This document shows positions 40,398-51,400 of a stretch of 64,000 bases of DNA, one piece after another (position 1 is the stretch's first letter; each line of letters starts with the position of its first letter). Under the pieces are notes generated by a model that saw nothing but the letters and a program-made list of their open reading frames with translations, was not told where the DNA came from and made no database searches. Origin of the DNA: Mytilus californianus (Eukaryota); NCBI RefSeq assembly GCF_021869535.1, contig NW_026262712.1, positions 115,072,001 through 115,136,000 on the forward strand. Reading direction: 5' to 3'. The translations under genes were made by a program, and so were the position numbers.

Positions 40398-40616
40398 TCA
40401 CATCTTCCCAGTAAGTGGTTTGAACGACCCTGGAGATTCCTTCCAGTGGGGCGGCCATGTAGCTTTAATACTAGGACGAGAGCTGAGTCTCTCATAATAC
40501 GACTTAATTTTGGGAAAACTGTTGAGATTCAGTCCCAGGCGAACACCAAATCCAATAAAAGGAAAAAAATATACATCAGCCATCGTGAAGTCAGGACCTG
40601 TGAGATAAGCGCCAGT
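40398..40616 (-). CDS. GST: GST exon 6 (TGAYLTGPDFTMADV...PLTGKM*)
   Basis: Acceptor TTTACAG at 40617-40623; 72 codons plus stop. Confidence 0.92.
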   Translation of the reverse strand, partial: TGAYLTGPDFTMADVYFFPFIGFGVRLGLNLNSFPKIKSYYERLSSRPSIKATWPPHWKESPGSFKPLTGKM

Positions 40617-43600
40617 CTGTAAATAATTAGAATATAATGCGTTAAATCATTATGTAAATTTATGTATATTTGTGTTCTGCTTACTGGAGAAAAAACATTG
40701 TATGTAGGTCGGTAAAATATTCTTATTTTTGGAAATATTTTAAAAAGGCTTAAGAGTGAAATTTTCTGGACTTGTCAATATAACGTTTGTGTGTGAAAAT
40801 GAGTCATTGCTATTTTACAAAACTGACTATAACTTCTCTTAAAATTGTTCTTTCGTGGTCGAAAACCACATGCAGCCCATCCAAATTAGGTGACCTTTGG
40901 TTGGCTTAATGTTTTCATTGTTTCTATATCCGTTAACTACTGGCCAAAATGACGGAAGTGATTAGATTTCCTCTCCAGTTTCAGTATATAAGTTTAAATT
41001 CTCCCTCATAAATTCGTCCGAATTTAAAACATTTCTAGTCTATCTACATGGCTAAATAAGAGGCAAGTCAAAATGTAGGCATGGTTTTCTCGCAACATTT
41101 AATAAAGATAATAAAAACATTACAAATATCTCTAAACAAACACACATCTAGCTATTCTACACTACATCATTATAATATAATGCAAATAATATACTATGCA
41201 GAACGTGTTGTACTTAGAAGTTAATGTGAGCACCTCGATACATACTATACAAGTATCGGACTTATATATGACTATAGAACCCCACCCGTAATACCGCCTT
41301 GGAAATGCCCGTGCGGTACTAACCAAAGACTTATATTTAGATAATAATCAAACTAGCTCTACAAACTAGTTCTACAAACTTGTTCCACAATAACTAAAGA
41401 TAGAAATAGATAAAAGAAAATCCAAATATAACGGAATAGAAATAAACAAATATAATGTGTTGCAATTTCAGAGAAATGCACCAATGTAGTGTTATTGATA
41501 AAACATCTCTTTTCATCCCGGCGCCCTCGGTTACATCTTGAACTTGCAGTGAGATGTCGGTGTTTTCTGTTGAAGGTCTCGCTGTGACTTTCAGATGAAA
41601 AAAAGCAAAATATTAGGATTCCTTCATGAAGTAAATACAGTTTCGAACTATATCCATTCTTTTTCATGATTATTAAAAACAACAAGTTTAATAATTTCAT
41701 GCGTCCGAAGCGCTTTTCTGGATTTATCTTCATCAGGAACGCTCAATGCCAAACATTTGAAATCCGAGGGATGTAGAAGTACCGAAACAGTTGACGAGCT
41801 ATATAACAAAAATACCTAAAATAAGTAGCCAAATTCATCTAAGATCAACTTTGCCTGAGGGAGTTGAAACCTTAGTTTCTTTATAATTTCAAAATTTATA
41901 AACGGACAATTTTAGAAAAGTTTGTTATAAATCATGTCAGTACCGAAGTACTGACTACTGAGCTGATGATACCCTCGGGGACTGATATTCCACCAGCAGA
42001 GGTATCGACCCAGTGATGTAAAAAATTGAAAACAACACGTTTAATAATGTCATGCGTCCGAAGCGCTTTTCTGGATTTACCTTCATCAGGAACGCTCAAT
42101 GCCAAACATTTGAAATCCGAGGGATGTATAAGTACCGAAACAGTTGAAGAGCTATATGACAAAAATACCTAAAACAAATAGCCAAATTCATCTAAGGTCA
42201 ACTTTGCCTGAGAGAGTTGAAACCTTAGTTTCTTTATAATTTCAAAATTTATAAAGGGACAATTTTAGAGACGTTTGTTATAAATCATGTCAGTACCGAA
42301 GTACTGACTACTGAGCTGATGATACCCTCGGGGACTGATAGTCCACCAGCAGAGGCATCGACCAAGGGATTGTAAAAAATTGAAAACAACACGTTTAATA
42401 ATTTCATGCGTCCGAAGCGCTTTTCTGGATTTACCTTCATCAGGAACGCTCAATGCCAAACATTTGAAATCCGAGGGATGTATAAGTACCGAAATAGTTG
42501 AAGAGCTATATGACAAAAATACCTAAAACAAATAGCCAAATTCATCTAAGGTCAACTTTGCCTGAGGGAGTTGAAACCTTAGTTTCTTTATAATTTCAAA
42601 ATTTATAAACGGACAATTTTAGAAAAGTTTGTTATAAATCATGTCAGTACCGAAGTACTGACTACTGAGCTGATGATACCCTCGGGGACTGATAGTCCAC
42701 CAACAGAGGTATCGACCCAGTGATGTAAAAAATTGAAAACAACACGTTTAATAATTTCATGCGTCCGAAGCGCTTTTTATAACAGATAAACGACTGTAAT
42801 ACAAGAGAGAGGTTTAGTGAGCTATCAAACCTGGTTTAATCCACCATTTTCTATATAAGGAAATGCCTGTAACCAGACAGGAATGTGATAGTTGTTTTCC
42901 ATTCGTTTGATGTGTTTGACCTTTTGATTTTGCCACTTGGTTATAAAGGACTTTCCGTTTTGATTTTTTTCTTGGAGTTCGGTATTTTTTTTTTATTTTA
43001 GTTTTTATTACCTGTCCCAAGTAATCATTCCAGCGATTGAGTTCGTCTTTCAGTGTCTGTGTCTTTCTTGCAAGAGTATCCTGTAAACATATTCATCGGT
43101 GATGAGGAACTTTTTTTTGTAATGATTATGTAATTATTATCTTGTGCAGTGTAAATATTGTCATTTATTTTTGGCTGTATTATATCGTGTATCTAATTAT
43201 TTCCATTGTTCAGGCAACGGTGTTTTTCTTTCGAGATAGTGATTGACTTATTAGTATCTTACTTTCTTTATATAATTTTATTCCGGTCCCATCTTTAGTT
43301 TTGTCTCGACTGCAAAAAATGAACGTAGGACGTGAATAAAACGTACGATCTTCGAATCATTTGCAGGAATGTCATTTATACTGTTGACTTTTAAATCCTT
43401 TGCTTGAAAACTTTGTGAACCATGTATTTTATGAATGATTTTATCTTCTTAAACATATGAACTTTGTTTGATAATAAATGTCTGTAAAAGTTTCAGTTGA
43501 ATTTATTATCATCACCTTTTAAATCTGTATAATCACATGCCTATCACCGTATAATGACCTCTTTATGTCTTGCTCACCCTTTTAAATCTCTGTAAGATTT

Positions 43601-46600
43601 ATTCTGTATAGACACATGCCTATCACCGTATAATGACCTCTATATGTCCTGCTCACCCTTTTAAATCTCTGTAAGATTTATTCTGTATAGACACATGCCT
43701 ATCATCGTATAATGACCTCTTTATGTCTTGCTCACCCTTTTAAATCTCTGTAAGATTTATACTGTATAGACACATGCCTATCACCGTATAATGACCTCTA
43801 TATGTCTTGCTCACCCTTTTAAATCTCTGTAAGATTTATTCTGTATAGACACATGGCTATCACCGTATAATGACCTCTATATGTCCTGCTCACCCTTTTA
43901 AATCTCTGTAAGATTTATTCTGTATAGACACATGCCTATCACCGTATAATGACCTCTATATGTCTTGCTCATCCTTTTAAATCTCTGTAAGATTTATTCT
44001 GTATAGACACATGCCTATCACCGTATAATGACCTCTATATGTCCTGCTCACCCTTTTAAATCTCTGTAAGATTTATTCTGTATAGACACATGCCTATCAC
44101 CGTATAATGACCTCTATATGTCCTGCTCACCCTTTTAAATCTCTGTAAGATTTATTCTGTATAGACACATGCCTATCACCTAATGATGACCTCTATATGT
44201 CCTGCTCCCCCTTTTAAATCTCTGTAAGATTTATTCTGTATAGACCCAATTCTTAGTATGACTTACCGGATTCATATCTTCTTCTTTCGTCTCCATAAAT
44301 TCATAGAGATAATCCAACAACATTTTATGCATTAAGTTAGCCACAGCCTAGAATTAAATCAACAATACTCTCGTAAATGAATGACGGGTATAAAAATGAA
44401 ACATTGATCGATGTTACAGATTTAATTGAAATGTTTTGATGATGATTGATCTTACAAAAATAATAATAAAATCATCACAAATAGAGTTTTCTGCATTTTG
44501 AATGTTATTCATGTTTTATTTTCATTATCATTTGCAAATATCCTGACAACTGTTGTTCCAATATTTAGTACACCTTTTTTTTCTAACTGCATGATTTCGA
44601 ACACCCCCTCCAATATAGAATAAGCAGTTGTGCCATTAGTGCACGATACACCTTTTTGTTTTGCTTTTTGAAATTGTGCAATAATCATAAATCCTAGTTC
44701 CAAGTGTACTAGAACTAATCTGATGGTGACAGTCAATAAACCCTGGAGAATAAATCAAAAGATACCTTACTATAACCAATTCCAATAATTGTGTAAAGTT
44801 TTAAATATTAAGTTTATCCAAGAATTTTCAAGTTAGTGTACAACATGTAAAAATTAACTAAAATATGACAATTAAAGTCCAGCAACTCTTGAACGAATAA
44901 CAAGGAAGGTTTCAAAATAAAAAAAGTTTCTTATAGTAAATTTAAATAACAGCTCAAAGTTTTGAGTGAATCAATCTAAGTATGCTAGTTAAGCTCCCTT
45001 TACTTTAGAACGACAAAGTAAAAACAAATTCAAAATCGAAAAGGAGCTTTTTTTAATCATTCCCATTAACAGCGTACAGTTTTAGGTAAATTCATCCAAT
45101 CAAACTTGAGTTAGTGTGCGACATGTGATAAATTGCTCTAAATTTTATAGTTAAGGTCCTGTAACTCTGGAACGTCGAACCAAACAAAAATTCAAATCAA
45201 TAGTGAGCTGTCTTCTATCAATCCTATTGTTGTGTTAAAATTTCCTGAGAACTGTGAGCTGTTGTATGAAGAGTTAACATACGGATGGACAGAGGGACAA
45301 CGGTATACCATATTATCTCCATGACGTGTGTATAAAAAGGAGGTGTTGAATGAGACATCTATCCACCAAAGTTCAATTGATTTGGATTTAAGCATTTATG
45401 GGTAAACATAATTAAACAATGGGCATTGTATTGTCAGCTATAAAATGTTCAGATATGACAAAAATATAAAACAATTCAAACGAATCAGACGAATCAAAAC
45501 TGTTTCCTACCGTTAATTGTCGTTTCAATTACATCATTCTGAATTAAAGGGCTGTACCGCGTTAACAGCCGTGTTTTTTATCTAATATTTACAGATTTAA
45601 CAAGAATTATGCCTAATGTATTGTAAACATACACAATACATTTTATGTTTAACTCGAGAATTGTTATATTTGGTAAATACCGGGCAAACATGTACAAATA
45701 AAATATTTCATTAATAAATATATGTTGATGATCGAGTTGTTATAAACAAATTGTATTGTAGTTACTGACATCGTTTATGAGCAACAATCGTTACTGGTAT
45801 TATAGTAAAAATAAAATACTGACCTCATTCATCCTTTGTAGAACAAGCGCCCTCTGTTTTGTACCAGATGGTATGAGTTGTGTCCCTTTATCTTTATAAG
45901 TACTCTGTAGATATACACATCAAGAATAACCATGGTAATGACTTGAAGAAAAATATATTAATATATGGCATTTTACATATCTATCGGATTATCACTCGAT
46001 TCCTCGACCTATGTCTGACGCTCGACTAGAGCCTCTGTCTGAAATGAGAACCTGTGGTGGATCATGGAAAAATCCATACATTTATCTGTTGATCATGTAC
46101 TTCCAATTCAAGAACGCACCCAGGCTGATAACTCATATCAGTACATCCAGGTGAAGTGAGTCTGTCCTGGGCACGTGGAGTCCGTGTAGTCCGTCTGTGT
46201 GAAGTTCGTCCGTCCACGTAAACCAGACTGAGTCCGTGCGTTTGAACGATACATTAAGTGCGAGGGTTTTATATCGAATCAAGGTCGTTAAAAAAAAACA
46301 TCACCAATAAACATAATTTAAATATTATTTCTTATTGATAAAATGTCCTACTTTGATTGATCGTTGTTTAATTTACGTCCAGTGGCAAATATTTCATGCA
46401 TGTTCAGGACCAGTCCTACTTTGATAATTTCCAACAGTTTACATGCTAATAATTAAAAACATTGTATTGTATTTAAATGTAGGTTATCATTTTTTTTTTA
46501 TTCTAAAAACGTATTTTCATTTCATATAAATAATTGTAGACTAGTGGACAAGTTGAATGCATTAAAATGTTAGACCAATAAGACAAAAATTATTAGACCA

Positions 46601-47367
46601 AACATACCTCAAGATATTCACATATTGCACCAGACTCATTAACGACCACCTCTCCGTCTGTAAACGTCGGTACCTATAATCATGATAATATTACTTACAG
46701 ACTGAAATACTGAAACAAATATAATACATTGAACAACAAACATCTCCATCGGAAAACGTTGGTTTATAACAAAACCGAAGAAATATTTTTCAGAGCCTAT
46801 TCCCTTGAACCTATTCCACATGATTTTTTTTTAATTTTGGTGATTGAAGTCGTTAGATAGACAGGAATGCTGCACTCGCGAAAAAATTCACACATATCTT
46901 ATTTTTTGAATGAATAAAATAACAAATAAAGGCTGAAATTGGAAAATGACTTCAGTAAATTCTCTACACATTTAGATGTATTTTGTCACGTATGGGGGTC
47001 CATACATGATGATGTTAGAACCTCGGTTAGAACTTCCGTAATATAATATTTTATAAGATATTAATGTACGATGTACGGTAATTATAGTTTTAAGTTTAAG
47101 ATAAAGTAGTGCAATTAAATATTGCTTATTGCATAGAACATGTATAAAGTGTCTTCGCAGTGATTATGTGTGTGCTAAATATGAATATAGATCACTTACC
47201 TCTCCTCTGGGGTTAAGTTTTAGGACGTCTCCTCCTTTCATTTCATTGTTGTCAAATGAAATTAATTTATTTTTATATCCACTGAATCCTTTCTCCTCCA
47301 AAGCAATCATTGCTTTCCAACACGGTACACTACCAGAACCCCAGTACAGAAACATATTCTCAGCCAT
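40398..47367 (-). CDS. GST: Rho-class (GST-A-like) glutathione S-transferase, six coding exons, 227 aa, apparently intact
   Basis: Exons 47200-47367, 46608-46673, 45824-45904, 44267-44347, 43012-43080, 40398-40616. All introns are GT..AG and phase 0. Motifs LYWGSGSVPCW, LNPRGEVP, VNESGAICEYLE, FTMADV, RPSIKATWPPHW. AATAAA at 40354-40359 (minus). Confidence 0.93.
41701..41742 (-). ncRNA. Minimal type I hammerhead ribozyme (array copy)
   Basis: GCGTTC-CTGATGA-AGATAAATCCA-GAAA-AGCGCT-TC^-GGACGC; stem II carries one substitution. Confidence 0.7.
42054..42095 (-). ncRNA. Minimal type I hammerhead ribozyme (array copy)
   Basis: GCGTTC-CTGATGA-AGGTAAATCCA-GAAA-AGCGCT-TC^-GGACGC; 6-bp stem I, palindromic stem III AAGCGCTT. 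Confidence 0.78.
42408..42449 (-). ncRNA. Minimal type I hammerhead ribozyme (array copy)
   Basis: Same motif as 42054-42095. Confidence 0.78.
42790..43000 (+). repeat. Interspersed repeat with T-rich end (family also at ~38205-38348 and 57345-57699)
   Basis: Shared GTTGTTTTCCATTCGTTTGATGTGTTTGA...GGACTTTCCGTTTTGA...GGAGTTCGGTATTTT. Confidence 0.75.
43012..43080 (-). CDS. GST: GST exon 5 (DTLARKTQTLKDELNRWNDYLGQ)
   Basis: TTTACAG acceptor, GTAATA donor, 69 nt. Confidence 0.9.
43535..44245. repeat. 79-bp minisatellite, 9 units, in GST intron 4
   Basis: ACATGCC recurs every 79 bp from 43535 to 44167; the array ends ~20 bp from the exon 4 donor. Confidence 0.95.
44267..44347 (-). CDS. GST: GST exon 4 (AVANLMHKMLLDYLYEFMETKEEDMNP)
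   Basis: TTCTAG acceptor, GTAAGT donor, 81 nt. Confidence 0.88.
45824..45904 (-). CDS. GST: GST exon 3 (STYKDKGTQLIPSGTKQRALVLQRMNE)
   Basis: CTACAG acceptor, GTCAGT donor, 81 nt. Confidence 0.9.
46608..46673 (-). CDS. GST: GST exon 2 (VPTFTDGEVVVNESGAICEYLE)
   Basis: TTATAG acceptor, GTATGT donor, 66 nt. Confidence 0.92.
47200..47367 (-). CDS. GST: GST exon 1 (MAENMFLYWGSGSVPCW...LNPRGE)
   Basis: ATG at 47365-47367, GTAAGT donor, 168 nt. Confidence 0.92.
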
Positions 47368-49435: not shown

Positions 49436-50043
49436 AGAACTGTTCAATGGACTTCGTTGATGAGTTCTCTTTAATGATATTTTTTACTTATTTAATTTGC
49501 AGTGTTATTTATATAGTGAACTCATTTTTGCAACTCTAATAAAAACAAAACAGTAAGTATAAGCATACAAATGATCAGATATAAAACTTCTACAAATAAA
49601 TCAGCATGACTGAATTATTAGAATGTCCTTTTATGGTTAAAAGGCCATATTTACTTTTATATTAGAATTAATTGGAGACGTGAAATGATGCCAATGAAAG
49701 ATAACCACTGATGTTCCGAAAGGTTTTATTGTTGCATATATTTTTTACAAGGATGGTTCAGGCTAAGCTATTTATATACTATAATGTCGTTACTATGCGT
49801 ATGGTATATATGCAAACATAAGTTAGTACGTACGAACTGATCTTTAAAATTAGGAAACGCATATGCTCTTCCATGCTTGTCGAGCCTGCGACATTTATGT
49901 AGCGGGAACGAGACATTGCAATCATGGATTCTGTCATCGGCGTCGTCGTCAACATTTAGGTTCAGTTTGTGGTTAAAGTTCTTTTAGACATCAATAACTT
50001 TGTCAAACCTTAATAGACTTTCTGAAATGCACAGAGGCCTCGA

Positions 50044-50087
50044 GCATCACTGAAGAGACATTCATTGTCGAAATGCGCATCTGGTGC
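50044..50087 (+). ncRNA. Canonical-core type I hammerhead ribozyme
   Basis: GCATCA-CTGAAGA-GAC(ATTCATT)GTC-GAAA-TGCGCA-TC^-TGGTGC; all three stems pair. Confidence 0.85.
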
Positions 50088-50389
50088 AGAAACATTGGTA
50101 CCGTTAATGTTATTACTTCCACTGGGGCGATGCCTCTACTGTTGGACTGTTAGTCCCCGAGGTTATCACCAGCCCAGTAGCCAGAACTTCGGTACTTGCA
50201 TGTAAATACGGATTTTGTGTTATTCAAATTTGCTGTTACAAAATTTTAGCAATTATTCTAAATTAAGGAATATATCTTCCTCATGCAAAGCTCTGATTCC
50301 TTGCGCGGCTTTGGCTATACTTTTTTGTCCTTTTTGGTTTATAGCTCTTCATCTTTTTAATAAGCTTTGGATTTTTAATTTGGCCTCGA

Positions 50390-50433
50390 GCATCACTGAA
50401 GATACATTAATTGTCGAAATGCGCATCTGGTGC
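50390..50433 (+). ncRNA. Type I hammerhead ribozyme, first stem II pair broken
   Basis: As 50044 but stem II reads TAC/GTC. Confidence 0.7.
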
Positions 50434-51400
50434 AGAAAAATTGGTACCGTTAATGCTATTAGTCTTTTGCATTTAACAAATAGATACAGTCTGGAGTAAA
50501 ATTTTGTAGAACACCAATTACTTTGTCAAACCTTGTTAAAATTTTATGAAACATTGTCAGCAGCCATTTTTTATGATTGAGAGATATTGTCTGAAGCACA
50601 ATTTAAAAAAAATATACTTTTTCCAGGAAATTACTGATAGATGTACTTTTTGCAGTTAACATTGACTGACAGTTTGGGATTAAATAATTTTTATGATAAA
50701 TTCATAAACCTTCATGGATTGTTATGTAACTTGGACAGATGCTTATATTCAAGATCAAGAAATAGCATCTAAAGATTTTTTTTTTTTATTTCAATTCCGC
50801 ATTTTATTGATAAATGGGCTCACGCGTTTACCCTGAAAGTATCGCTGCAATCGCAATCGTAGGCGACACACAGGGTTCCGCACAACCCTTTACAAATTTC
50901 ATTGTTATTTTTCAGATTGACAGTTTCTAAACTCTTTTTGGTGGAACTTAGTGATGATGTTGTTGTTTGCACTTCGTTTGAAAACTAAAGAAAGGTATTC
51001 AAGATAATATGAATACGTTTGTGCTTGCCGGATTTTTGTTTTTTATACGAATCATTTTATTCGATTTACATTTGTGTATACTATGAAGTTATTCAATAGT
51101 CTCAAGGTTTATACCTTTAATCGTCGTCGCCGTATATTTCGTTGTTTTTTCAAGAGTGTGTGTGTATTGGGACAGCATATGCATAATTAACAAAGTTCTA
51201 TCTTTAATAAGTATTTGATTTGCAGTGTTATTTATATAGTGAACTCTAATGACGTTCCCTCCATGCATTCAGTTCTTGTTCTCCGAGTCTTGGAAACGAA
51301 TTACATGGCTGTCTGTGTATTCTGAAATAAACATTGTATATATCACTGAATCATTGAGGATTATTTGATAACTACTTTATCGTTACAAAATATCGAAGAA

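What the first reader, a model, noticed from the sequence alone, without database searches (positions are those of the whole stretch)
41675..42777. Tandem hammerhead (retrozyme-like) array in sense orientation inside an intron of an intact GST gene
Seen: three complete minimal type I hammerheads and a fourth half-site, spaced 353/354/353 nt, on the same strand as the GST pre-mRNA within intron 5 (40617-43011). Predicted cuts fall between 41707/41706, 42060/42059, 42414/42413 and possibly 42767/42766. Established: minimal hammerheads with palindromic stem III cleave as dimers in tandem repeats, and such non-LTR retrozymes yield small circular RNAs in metazoans, including mussels as I recall. 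Inference: GST transcription would both feed ~353-nt circRNA production and expose the pre-mRNA to self-cleavage before the last exon is spliced. That would couple a detoxification gene's output to a ribozyme array. Caveat: an A-A pair sits at the base of stem II.
Basis: partly seen in the sequence, partly recalled or inferred. Interest (0 to 1): 0.9.

Follow-up and report, generated by a model that had tools for sequence, protein, structure and literature searches.

The report
Mussel retrozyme array in GST intron
A three-unit array of a very abundant mussel retrotransposon carrying hammerhead self-cleaving RNA motifs sits, in the sense direction, in the last intron of an expressed glutathione transferase gene; the gene still splices normally, so it looks like an ordinary passenger insertion.

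Summary
A 353-bp repeat (41672-42777, 3.1 units, minus strand) carries three complete type I hammerhead motifs plus a cleavage-site half-motif. It lies in sense in intron 5 (40617-43011) of an intact six-exon rho-class GST gene.

It is not special to this locus. The same hammerhead occurs about 7,900 times in this 1.65-Gb genome. The unit is homologous over its whole length to the published Mytilus non-LTR retrozyme, whose own hammerhead occurs about 10,260 times here.

Arrays of this family share a fixed 3' end about 40 nt past the cut site and variable 5' truncation. That pattern fits target-primed reverse transcription of a circular or multimeric RNA.

This hammerhead is a variant: A.A at 10.1/11.1, a two-pair stem II, and A-U at 15.2/16.2. 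Rfam does not detect it, and its activity is untested.

Stranded RNA reads show 82 clean exon 5-exon 6 junctions and intron depth of 0-4 against about 75 in exons. There is no pile-up of read ends at the predicted cuts and no excess of sense retrozyme RNA.

The proposed coupling of GST output to the ribozymes is therefore unsupported. The scan has noted many intronic hammerhead arrays elsewhere in this genome.

The parts
41672..42777 (-). Retrozyme array: a 5'-truncated start (11 nt before a cut site), three full units (42766-42414, 42413-42060, 42059-41707) and a 35-nt 3' terminal piece (41706-41672)
   Evidence: TRF; BLAST of the unit against the window; sequence
42408..42449 (-). Hammerhead copy 1, identical to the commonest sequence of the family; C17 at 42414
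42054..42095 (-). Hammerhead copy 2, identical to the commonest sequence of the family; C17 at 42060
41701..41742 (-). Hammerhead copy 3 with G to A at 41727 (position 10.3), which leaves one G-C pair in stem II; C17 at 41707
   Evidence: its fold penalty is the highest of the three, 12.6 kcal/mol
42761..42777 (-). Half-site: helix III palindrome, C17 (42767) and the 3' strand of helix I, with no catalytic core. It could be cut only in trans or as part of a double hammerhead with copy 1
   Evidence: dimer topology
40617..43011 (-). GST intron 5 (GT..AG). About 46% of it is the retrozyme array; other repeats fill much of the rest
   Evidence: 82 split reads; splice sites
43012..43080 (-). GST exon 5 (DTLARK...DYLGQ)
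40398..40616 (-). GST exon 6 with the stop codon
44267..44347 (-). GST exon 4
   Evidence: 81 loose read ends at exon 5 continue into 44268-44297
45824..45904 (-). GST exon 3
46608..46673 (-). GST exon 2 (VPTFTDGEVVVNESGAICEYLE)
47200..47367 (-). GST exon 1, coding part from the ATG
42794..42981 (.). A different and even more abundant interspersed repeat, directly upstream of the array in the same intron
   Evidence: word depth up to 1.2 million in DNA-type runs, and RNA reads on both strands

Best explanation
This is one ordinary insertion of a young, very abundant non-LTR retrozyme family of a Mytilus-type mussel. It is a sister family (here called class 2) of the retrozyme described in M. 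galloprovincialis. Inferred origin: a class 2 RNA, circular or multimeric, was reverse-transcribed by target-primed reverse transcription, probably using a Penelope-like element's enzyme. Priming occurred in the U-rich tract about 40 nt downstream of the hammerhead cut site. The enzyme ran around or along the template about three times and stopped 11 nt before a cut site, and the cDNA was joined into GST intron 5. The array now rides along as a passenger in the GST pre-mRNA. Its hammerheads keep all 13 core nucleotides, but stem II is weak (two G-C pairs above an A.A) and stem III is weak (two A-U pairs plus a GCGC loop, or an 8-bp duplex between two copies). Any self-cleavage is therefore expected to be slow and helped by pairing of neighbouring copies. 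It could release up to three monomers of about 353 nt that a host RNA ligase could circularise. Exon 6 lies only 1.1-2.2 kb downstream and the intron is discarded anyway, so the effect on GST mRNA should be small. Shown here: the anatomy, the family membership, the copy numbers, the pattern of array ends, the gene model and normal splicing. Inferred: the insertion mechanism, weak ribozyme activity and the negligible effect on the gene.
For: The unit matches 124 scored places at 94-98% identity, out of 2,012 first-look candidates. The class 2 hammerhead occurs 7,903 times and the published Mytilus hammerhead 10,262 times, with zero hits to either reversed control. Only these two classes appear among 100 listed generic hits. 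Class 1 and class 2 units align over their whole length, and a long shared block covers unit positions 45-130 (clone Mg353 in PMC7229834 Suppl. Table 2). Between the classes the core is unchanged while the helices change compatibly: 1.1-2.1 U-A to G-C, 15.2-16.2 C-G to A-U, 10.2-11.2 U-A to G-C, 10.3-11.3 C-G to G-C, and 1.2-2.2 and 1.3-2.3 by single compatible changes. In 24 independent class 2 arrays the 3' end lies at unit position 35-46 while the 5' start varies across the unit. Class 1 arrays likewise end 45-48 nt after the cut. Junction microhomology or short duplications of at least 6 nt occur in 7 of 18 arrays, against 14% in mismatched controls. GC is about 37%. RNA: 82 exon 5-6 junction reads, 81 exon 4-5 junction reads, exon depth 54-79, and non-repeat intron depth 0-4 on the sense strand only. 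The cost of adopting the monomer hammerhead fold is similar to that of the experimentally active class 1 motif (7.6-12.6 vs 8.2-11.8 kcal/mol). The two-copy fold forms the double hammerhead at -27.9 kcal/mol against 2 x -9.5.
Against: Rfam's Hammerhead_1 model detects class 1 (32.5 bits, E 3e-6) but not class 2 at E<=10. A.A at 10.1/11.1 replaces the usual G-C, and no cleavage data exist for this variant. The RNA run laid was probably not suited to small circles, so neither circRNA nor cleavage of this family was observed. The window's 3' end (unit position about 35) is a few nucleotides shorter than usual, and its target-site duplication is ambiguous. A modest loss of GST transcripts by co-transcriptional cleavage cannot be excluded from steady-state reads.
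Confidence: 0.82

Rival explanations
1. One reading: the sense array acts on its host gene. GST transcription feeds production of circles of about 353 nt, and self-cleavage of the pre-mRNA before exon 6 is joined lowers GST output, coupling a detoxification gene to a ribozyme array.
For: The array is in sense orientation, and three or four cut sites lie upstream of the last exon. There is a precedent: the intronic CPEB3 ribozyme limits maturation of its host mRNA (PMC10919898). Xenopus retrozymes are mildly depleted from introns, which the authors read as selection against genic insertion. Exon 6 SNPs in the RNA run sit at about 30:70 (40409 and 40483), but this could not be linked to the array.
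Against: Exon 5-6 junction reads (82) equal exon 4-5 junction reads (81), and exon 6 depth equals exon 5 depth. No read ends pile up at the predicted sites, and array reads are not enriched for the sense strand. The locus holds 3 of about 7,900 motifs. The related class 1 motif cleaves at only about 0.1 per min (PMC7229834), whereas exon 6 is 1.1-2.2 kb away. At typical Pol II speeds (my own knowledge) that is about a minute or less.
Confidence: 0.06
2. The class 2 hammerhead is catalytically dead. The A.A at 10.1/11.1 and the two-pair stem II abolish cleavage, so the array is inert repeat DNA. The family then spreads as read-through or multimeric transcripts without a self-cleaved circular intermediate.
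For: There is no Rfam hit, whereas class 1 is found. Energy models prefer an alternative pairing of CUGAU with the 3' side of stem II. No cleavage ends and no sense-strand excess appear in the reads. Per-site variation among 36 units is not clearly lower in the motif (0.8% vs 1.2-1.3%).
Against: All 13 core nucleotides and the three-helix layout survive alongside four compensatory pair changes relative to class 1, which would be unexpected without constraint. The family is young and as successful as class 1. The fixed 3' end lies about 40 nt past the cut site and insertions are multimeric, which fits a circular template. The axolotl retrozyme hammerhead with a U.U at the base of helix II still cleaves, and cleaves better as a dimer (PMC7229834).
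Confidence: 0.25

Closest known systems
Non-LTR retrozymes of Mytilus galloprovincialis (Cervera and de la Pena 2020, NAR 48:5054; PMC7229834)
   Same: Tandem repeats of about 350 bp with low GC, each carrying a type I hammerhead with a 2-bp helix III capped by GCGC. They occur as thousands of dispersed copies. The unit is homologous over its whole length, including the CACTGGGTCGAT...CAGTAGTCAG block. The published hammerhead sequence itself occurs 10,262 times in this genome.
   Different: The hammerhead is a distinct class: stem II is A.A + G-C + G-C with loop UAAAU instead of GUC/GAC with a 7-nt loop; 15.2-16.2 is A-U instead of C-G; 1.1-2.1 is G-C instead of U-A. It does not fit the GAAAY/RUH descriptor quoted in that paper's supplement, and Rfam does not find it. 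No circRNA or cleavage data exist for it.
Newt/axolotl satellite 2 hammerheads and small Penelope-like-element hammerheads that cleave as dimers
   Same: Helix III is weak and has a palindromic sequence, so two neighbouring copies can form a double hammerhead. The axolotl HHR_Amex2 also has a mismatch (U.U) at the base of helix II and cleaves weakly as a monomer and better as a dimer.
   Different: The unit sequence is different and so are the host and the mismatch (A.A). Dependence on dimer formation has not been tested here.
Intronic self-cleaving ribozymes with a proposed role in host mRNA biogenesis (CPEB3 HDV-like ribozyme, PMC10919898; conserved amniote intronic hammerheads, de la Pena and Garcia-Robles 2010)
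   Same: A self-cleaving motif lies in sense orientation in an intron upstream of a coding exon.
   Different: Those are single, deeply conserved motifs at orthologous positions. This is a recent multi-copy transposon insertion with no sign of conservation or of an effect on splicing.

Membership tests
Hammerhead ribozyme, type I | Conserved core: C3 U4 G5 A6 N7 G8 A9, G12 A13 A14, A15.1-U16.1, and H17 that is not G | tested here: met
   CUGAUGA ... GAAA ... UC is present in all three copies
Hammerhead ribozyme, type I | Helix I open-ended and base-paired on both sides of the core | tested here: met
   GCGUUC pairs with GGACGC over 6 pairs; it covaries with class 1
Hammerhead ribozyme, type I | Closed helix II starting with a 10.1-11.1 pair (usually G-C) | tested here: not met
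   A.A sits at 10.1/11.1 and only two G-C pairs lie above it, one in copy 3. A mismatch at this place is tolerated in axolotl HHR_Amex2
Hammerhead ribozyme, type I | Helix III closing the core | tested here: met
   Two A-U pairs plus a GCGC loop in cis, or the 8-bp palindrome AAGCGCUU between two copies
Hammerhead ribozyme, type I | Match to the Rfam covariance model RF00163 | tested here: not met
   No hit at E<=10; the class 1 motif scores 32.5 bits against a gathering score of 34
Hammerhead ribozyme, type I | Site-specific self-cleavage after C17 | not testable with these tools
   No pile-up of read ends in one RNA run of low depth over the array, which is not decisive
Metazoan non-LTR retrozyme | Head-to-tail repeats of 150-450 bp, each with a type I hammerhead, with low GC and without LTR, PBS or PPT | tested here: met
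   353-bp units, GC 37%, no terminal repeats
Metazoan non-LTR retrozyme | Many dispersed genomic copies | tested here: met
   7,903 motif matches on many contigs
Metazoan non-LTR retrozyme | Homology to a described retrozyme of the same host group | tested here: met
   Full-length alignment with a class 1 unit of this genome, and shared blocks with clone Mg353
Metazoan non-LTR retrozyme | Expressed as monomer-length circular RNA | tested here: inconclusive
   RNA reads of both orientations at depth up to 17 and no listed back-joints in X21. About a fifth of the query's words is held by many runs guessed to be RNA and by one run recorded as RNA

The most novel reading that the evidence does not exclude
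The class 2 motif (A.A at 10.1/11.1, A-U at 15.2/16.2) is an active, largely dimer-dependent hammerhead variant that standard descriptors and Rfam miss. Sense-oriented intronic arrays such as this one would then act as insertion-polymorphic brakes on host genes, here giving heritable variation in rho-GST expression among mussels.
Probability: 0.06. Interest if true: 0.6.

Novelty: new member of a known kind. Interest (0 to 1): 0.25.

Why it matters
As a locus it matters little: it is one of thousands of retrozyme insertions, and the host gene is expressed and spliced normally.

Two by-products are of modest value to specialists. First, this mussel genome holds a second retrozyme family about as large as the published one. 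Its hammerhead departs from the consensus at 10.1/11.1 and 15.2/16.2 and escapes Rfam, so hammerhead censuses based on strict descriptors undercount. The variant is also a natural test of how much of stem II the ribozyme needs.

Second, both families show a fixed 3' end 40-48 nt downstream of the cut site, variable 5' truncation and junction microhomology. This is direct sequence evidence that insertions are made by target-primed reverse transcription. The template cannot be a linear monomer ending at the cleavage site, which favours a circular or multimeric RNA.

Tried and rejected
- Rfam gave no hammerhead hit for this array at E<=1 over 4.5 kb or at E<=10 over 1.2 kb; only chance mt-tmRNA and tsr31 matches appeared.
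- ARAGORN found no tRNA-like gene, so the B-box-like GGGTCGATGCC in the conserved block remains an untested idea.
- The predicted circular monomer is no more stable than shuffled sequence (z = -0.5, 54% paired), so there is no rod-like fold.
- Per-site variation among 36 units did not separate the motif from the rest; the copies are too young, about 1.2% from the majority sequence.
- Read laying showed no empty-site joint among the listed joints, no contig spanning the array, no back-joints in RNA and no pile-up of ends.
- The target-site duplication of this insertion is ambiguous: AT.AAAAAG on both sides overlaps element sequence.
- A candidate exon 2 (PTFSDGDV..., 46762-46694) was rejected. 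It has no AG acceptor, the frame breaks, and the true exon 2 is at 46673-46608.
- A literal search of the paper library for the class 2 motif found nothing.
- A second retrozyme noted by the scan at 50036-50461 gave no Rfam hit and was not pursued.

Full report
**1. What is there**

Tandem Repeats Finder reports a 353-bp repeat at 41672-42777 with 3.1 copies and 96% matches. Read on the minus strand, each full unit ends in GAGCGUUC-CUGAUGA-AGGUAAAUCCA-GAAA-AGCGCU-UC and the next unit starts with GGACGC.

This is the layout of a type I hammerhead:
- Helix I is GCGUUC paired with GGACGC (6 pairs).
- The core is CUGAUGA / GAAA, with A15.1-U16.1 and C17.
- Stem II is two G-C pairs over an A.A, with loop UAAAU.
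- Helix III is two A-U pairs with a GCGC loop.

The 42-nt motif occurs at 42408-42449 and 42054-42095 exactly, and at 41701-41742 with one change, G to A at 41727, which weakens stem II. A generic hammerhead pattern finds just these three sites in the 64-kb window, against 0.04 expected.

The "fourth half-site" (42777-42761) is the truncated 5' start of the array. It has the helix III palindrome, C17 and the 3' strand of helix I, but no core.

Rfam does not report a hammerhead here, even at E<=10.

**2. The host gene**

Exons 1 and 6 match the rho-class GST of the clam Laternula (PDB 3qav) at E 1e-13 and 3e-15.

I reconstructed six coding exons on the minus strand: 47367-47200, 46673-46608, 45904-45824, 44347-44267, 43080-43012 and 40616-40398. 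All have AG/GT splice sites, all are in phase 0, and together they give an uninterrupted 227-aa protein.

A stranded RNA run of the same species label (X21) gives 82 split reads from 49 start positions joining 43012 to 40616. A further 81 reads run from exon 5 into 44268-44297, which is exon 4. All lie in the orientation expected for a minus-strand mRNA. The gene is therefore intact and expressed, intron 5 is 40617-43011, and the hammerheads are in sense.

**3. The array is one copy of a very large family**

The unit finds 2,012 first-look candidates in the window's own 1.65-Gb genome, and the 124 places scored are 94-98% identical. The 30-nt hammerhead with up to 2 mismatches occurs 7,903 times, with 0 hits to the reversed control.

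The hammerhead of the published M. galloprovincialis retrozyme clone (PMC7229834 Suppl. Table 2) occurs 10,262 times. In a position-ordered sample of 100 generic hits, only these two classes appear. I call the published type class 1 and the type in this window class 2.

A class 1 unit from this genome aligns with the window's units along the whole length. A long shared block covers positions 45-130, and the core is shared.

Between the classes the 13 core nucleotides are unchanged, while the helices change compatibly:
- 1.1-2.1: U-A becomes G-C.
- 15.2-16.2: C-G becomes A-U.
- 10.2-11.2: U-A becomes G-C.
- 10.3-11.3: C-G becomes G-C.
- 1.2-2.2 and 1.3-2.3 differ by single compatible changes.

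The exception is 10.1-11.1, where G-C becomes A.A.

Rfam's Hammerhead_1 model scores class 1 at 32.5 bits (E 3e-6) but misses class 2. The supplement of the 2020 paper says that only motifs with perfect helices and a CUGANGA / GAAAY / RUH centre were aligned, and it describes two near-identical motifs, HHR A and HHR B. Class 2 (GAAAA / UUC, with the A.A) would not pass that filter. I found no paper containing the class 2 sequence. It is probably an undescribed sister family, though I could not inspect the paper's figures.

**4. How the array got there**

In 24 independent class 2 arrays the 3' end always lies at unit position 35-46, in the tract GUUGUUUUCAAUUUUUUAC. The 5' start falls anywhere in the unit, at positions 1, 29, 44, 52, 145, 151, 193, 245, 267-284, 299-332 and about 343. 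Class 1 arrays also end 45-48 nt after their cut site.

Junctions show microhomology or short duplications of at least 6 nt in 7 of 18 arrays, against 14% in mismatched flank pairs.

A fixed 3' end, 5' truncation and multimeric inserts are the signature of target-primed reverse transcription. The 3' end is not at the ribozyme cut, so the template was not a linear self-cleaved monomer. It was a circle or a multimer, as the retrozyme model proposes (PMC7229834 discussion). Penelope-like elements are the suspected helpers.

The window's array fits this pattern. It starts 11 nt before a cut site, runs three units and ends at about unit position 35. Its three units differ from the family majority sequence at 2, 8 and 9 private positions, so the insertion is fairly young. 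GC is 37%.

**5. Is the ribozyme likely to work?**

This was not testable here. Several points argue for activity:
- The core is intact and the helices covary with class 1.
- The family is successful, and its multimeric inserts with an internal start fit a circular template.
- The axolotl HHR_Amex2 has a U.U at the base of helix II and still cleaves: 22% per hour as a monomer, and much better as a dimer.
- Nearest-neighbour cost of the monomer hammerhead fold in 261-nt context is 7.6-12.6 kcal/mol for class 2. For class 1 it is 8.2-11.8 kcal/mol, and class 1 cleaves at about 0.1 per min.
- Two copies co-fold into the double hammerhead through the AAGCGCUU palindrome at -27.9 kcal/mol, against 2 x -9.5.

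Other points argue against:
- The A.A replaces the normally G-C 10.1-11.1 pair.
- Stem II has only two pairs, and one in copy 3.
- Energy models prefer an alternative pairing of the core.
- Rfam is silent.

I put activity, at least as dimers, at roughly 0.6-0.7.

**6. Does it affect GST?**

In X21 the exon depth is 54-79. Intron depth outside repeats is 0-4 and sense-only. Exon 5-6 junction reads (82) match exon 4-5 junction reads (81). No position shows a pile-up of read starts or ends.

Reads over the array (depth 0.1-17) come about equally from both orientations. That is expected for family-wide background from thousands of copies, not for a sense-strand product of this gene.

A DNA-type contig of the same study bridges the downstream flank into the array (41417-41705) and carries variants at 41523 and 41580. 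The intronic RNA reads carry the same variants, so an allele with the array is transcribed through.

Exon 6 SNPs sit near 30:70, but I could not link them to presence of the array.

On kinetics, exon 6 begins 1.1-2.2 kb after the cut sites, whereas the faster class 1 motif has a half-life of about 7 min (from kobs of about 0.1 per min). From general knowledge of Pol II speeds, little cleavage is expected before the acceptor is made. The CPEB3 ribozyme, the best precedent for an intronic brake, has a half-life of 2-3 min and about 9.9 kb to run.

In Xenopus, 42-44% of retrozyme copies are intronic, with only mild depletion. The scan's own unchecked notes list 48 intronic hammerhead findings in this genome, in both orientations. 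The coupling idea is possible in principle but has no support here.

**7. Verdict**

The retrozyme identification is right. The regulatory inference is not supported. This is a new copy of a known kind of element, and it belongs to a hammerhead variant family that seems not to have been described.

The genome's identity was not given. Exact copies of the M. galloprovincialis hammerhead in the thousands point to a Mytilus-type mussel.

Noticed in passing
window 42794-42981 (also flanks in L018, L036, L037): An interspersed repeat more abundant than the retrozyme (word depth up to 1.2 million in DNA-type runs, RNA on both strands) abuts the array. The same repeat flanks or is interrupted by retrozyme insertions at three other loci, which suggests either a preferred target or mere abundance.
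   Followed up: partly
window 43524-44245: A 79-bp tandem repeat (9.1 copies, 96% matches) fills much of GST intron 4 (43081-44266).
   Followed up: no
window 46694-46762 (minus strand): A decayed partial duplicate of GST exon 2 (PTFSDGDV...) lies about 90 nt upstream of the real exon 2. It is about 75% identical over 43 nt, has frame-breaking indels and lacks an AG acceptor.
   Followed up: partly
window 40409 and 40483: Two exon 6 SNPs in the RNA run sit at about 72% and 32% alternative allele, so two GST haplotypes are expressed near 70:30. Linkage to the array is unknown.
   Followed up: no
class 1 and class 2 units, positions about 45-130 (window 42284-42369 in the middle unit): The best-conserved block outside the ribozyme includes GGGTCGATGCC, which resembles a Pol III B box. 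It might be an internal promoter or a recognition site for the reverse transcriptase. ARAGORN finds no tRNA.
   Followed up: partly
window 50036-50461: The scan notes another retrozyme monomer here. Rfam gives no hit at E<=1 and my generic hammerhead pattern does not match it.
   Followed up: partly
L031-L042 (G000 contig C1): Most class 1 hits sampled are short 5'-truncated tails (about 45 nt of hammerhead plus the 45-48-nt 3' piece) rather than arrays, so the motif counts overstate the number of units able to release a monomer.
   Followed up: partly
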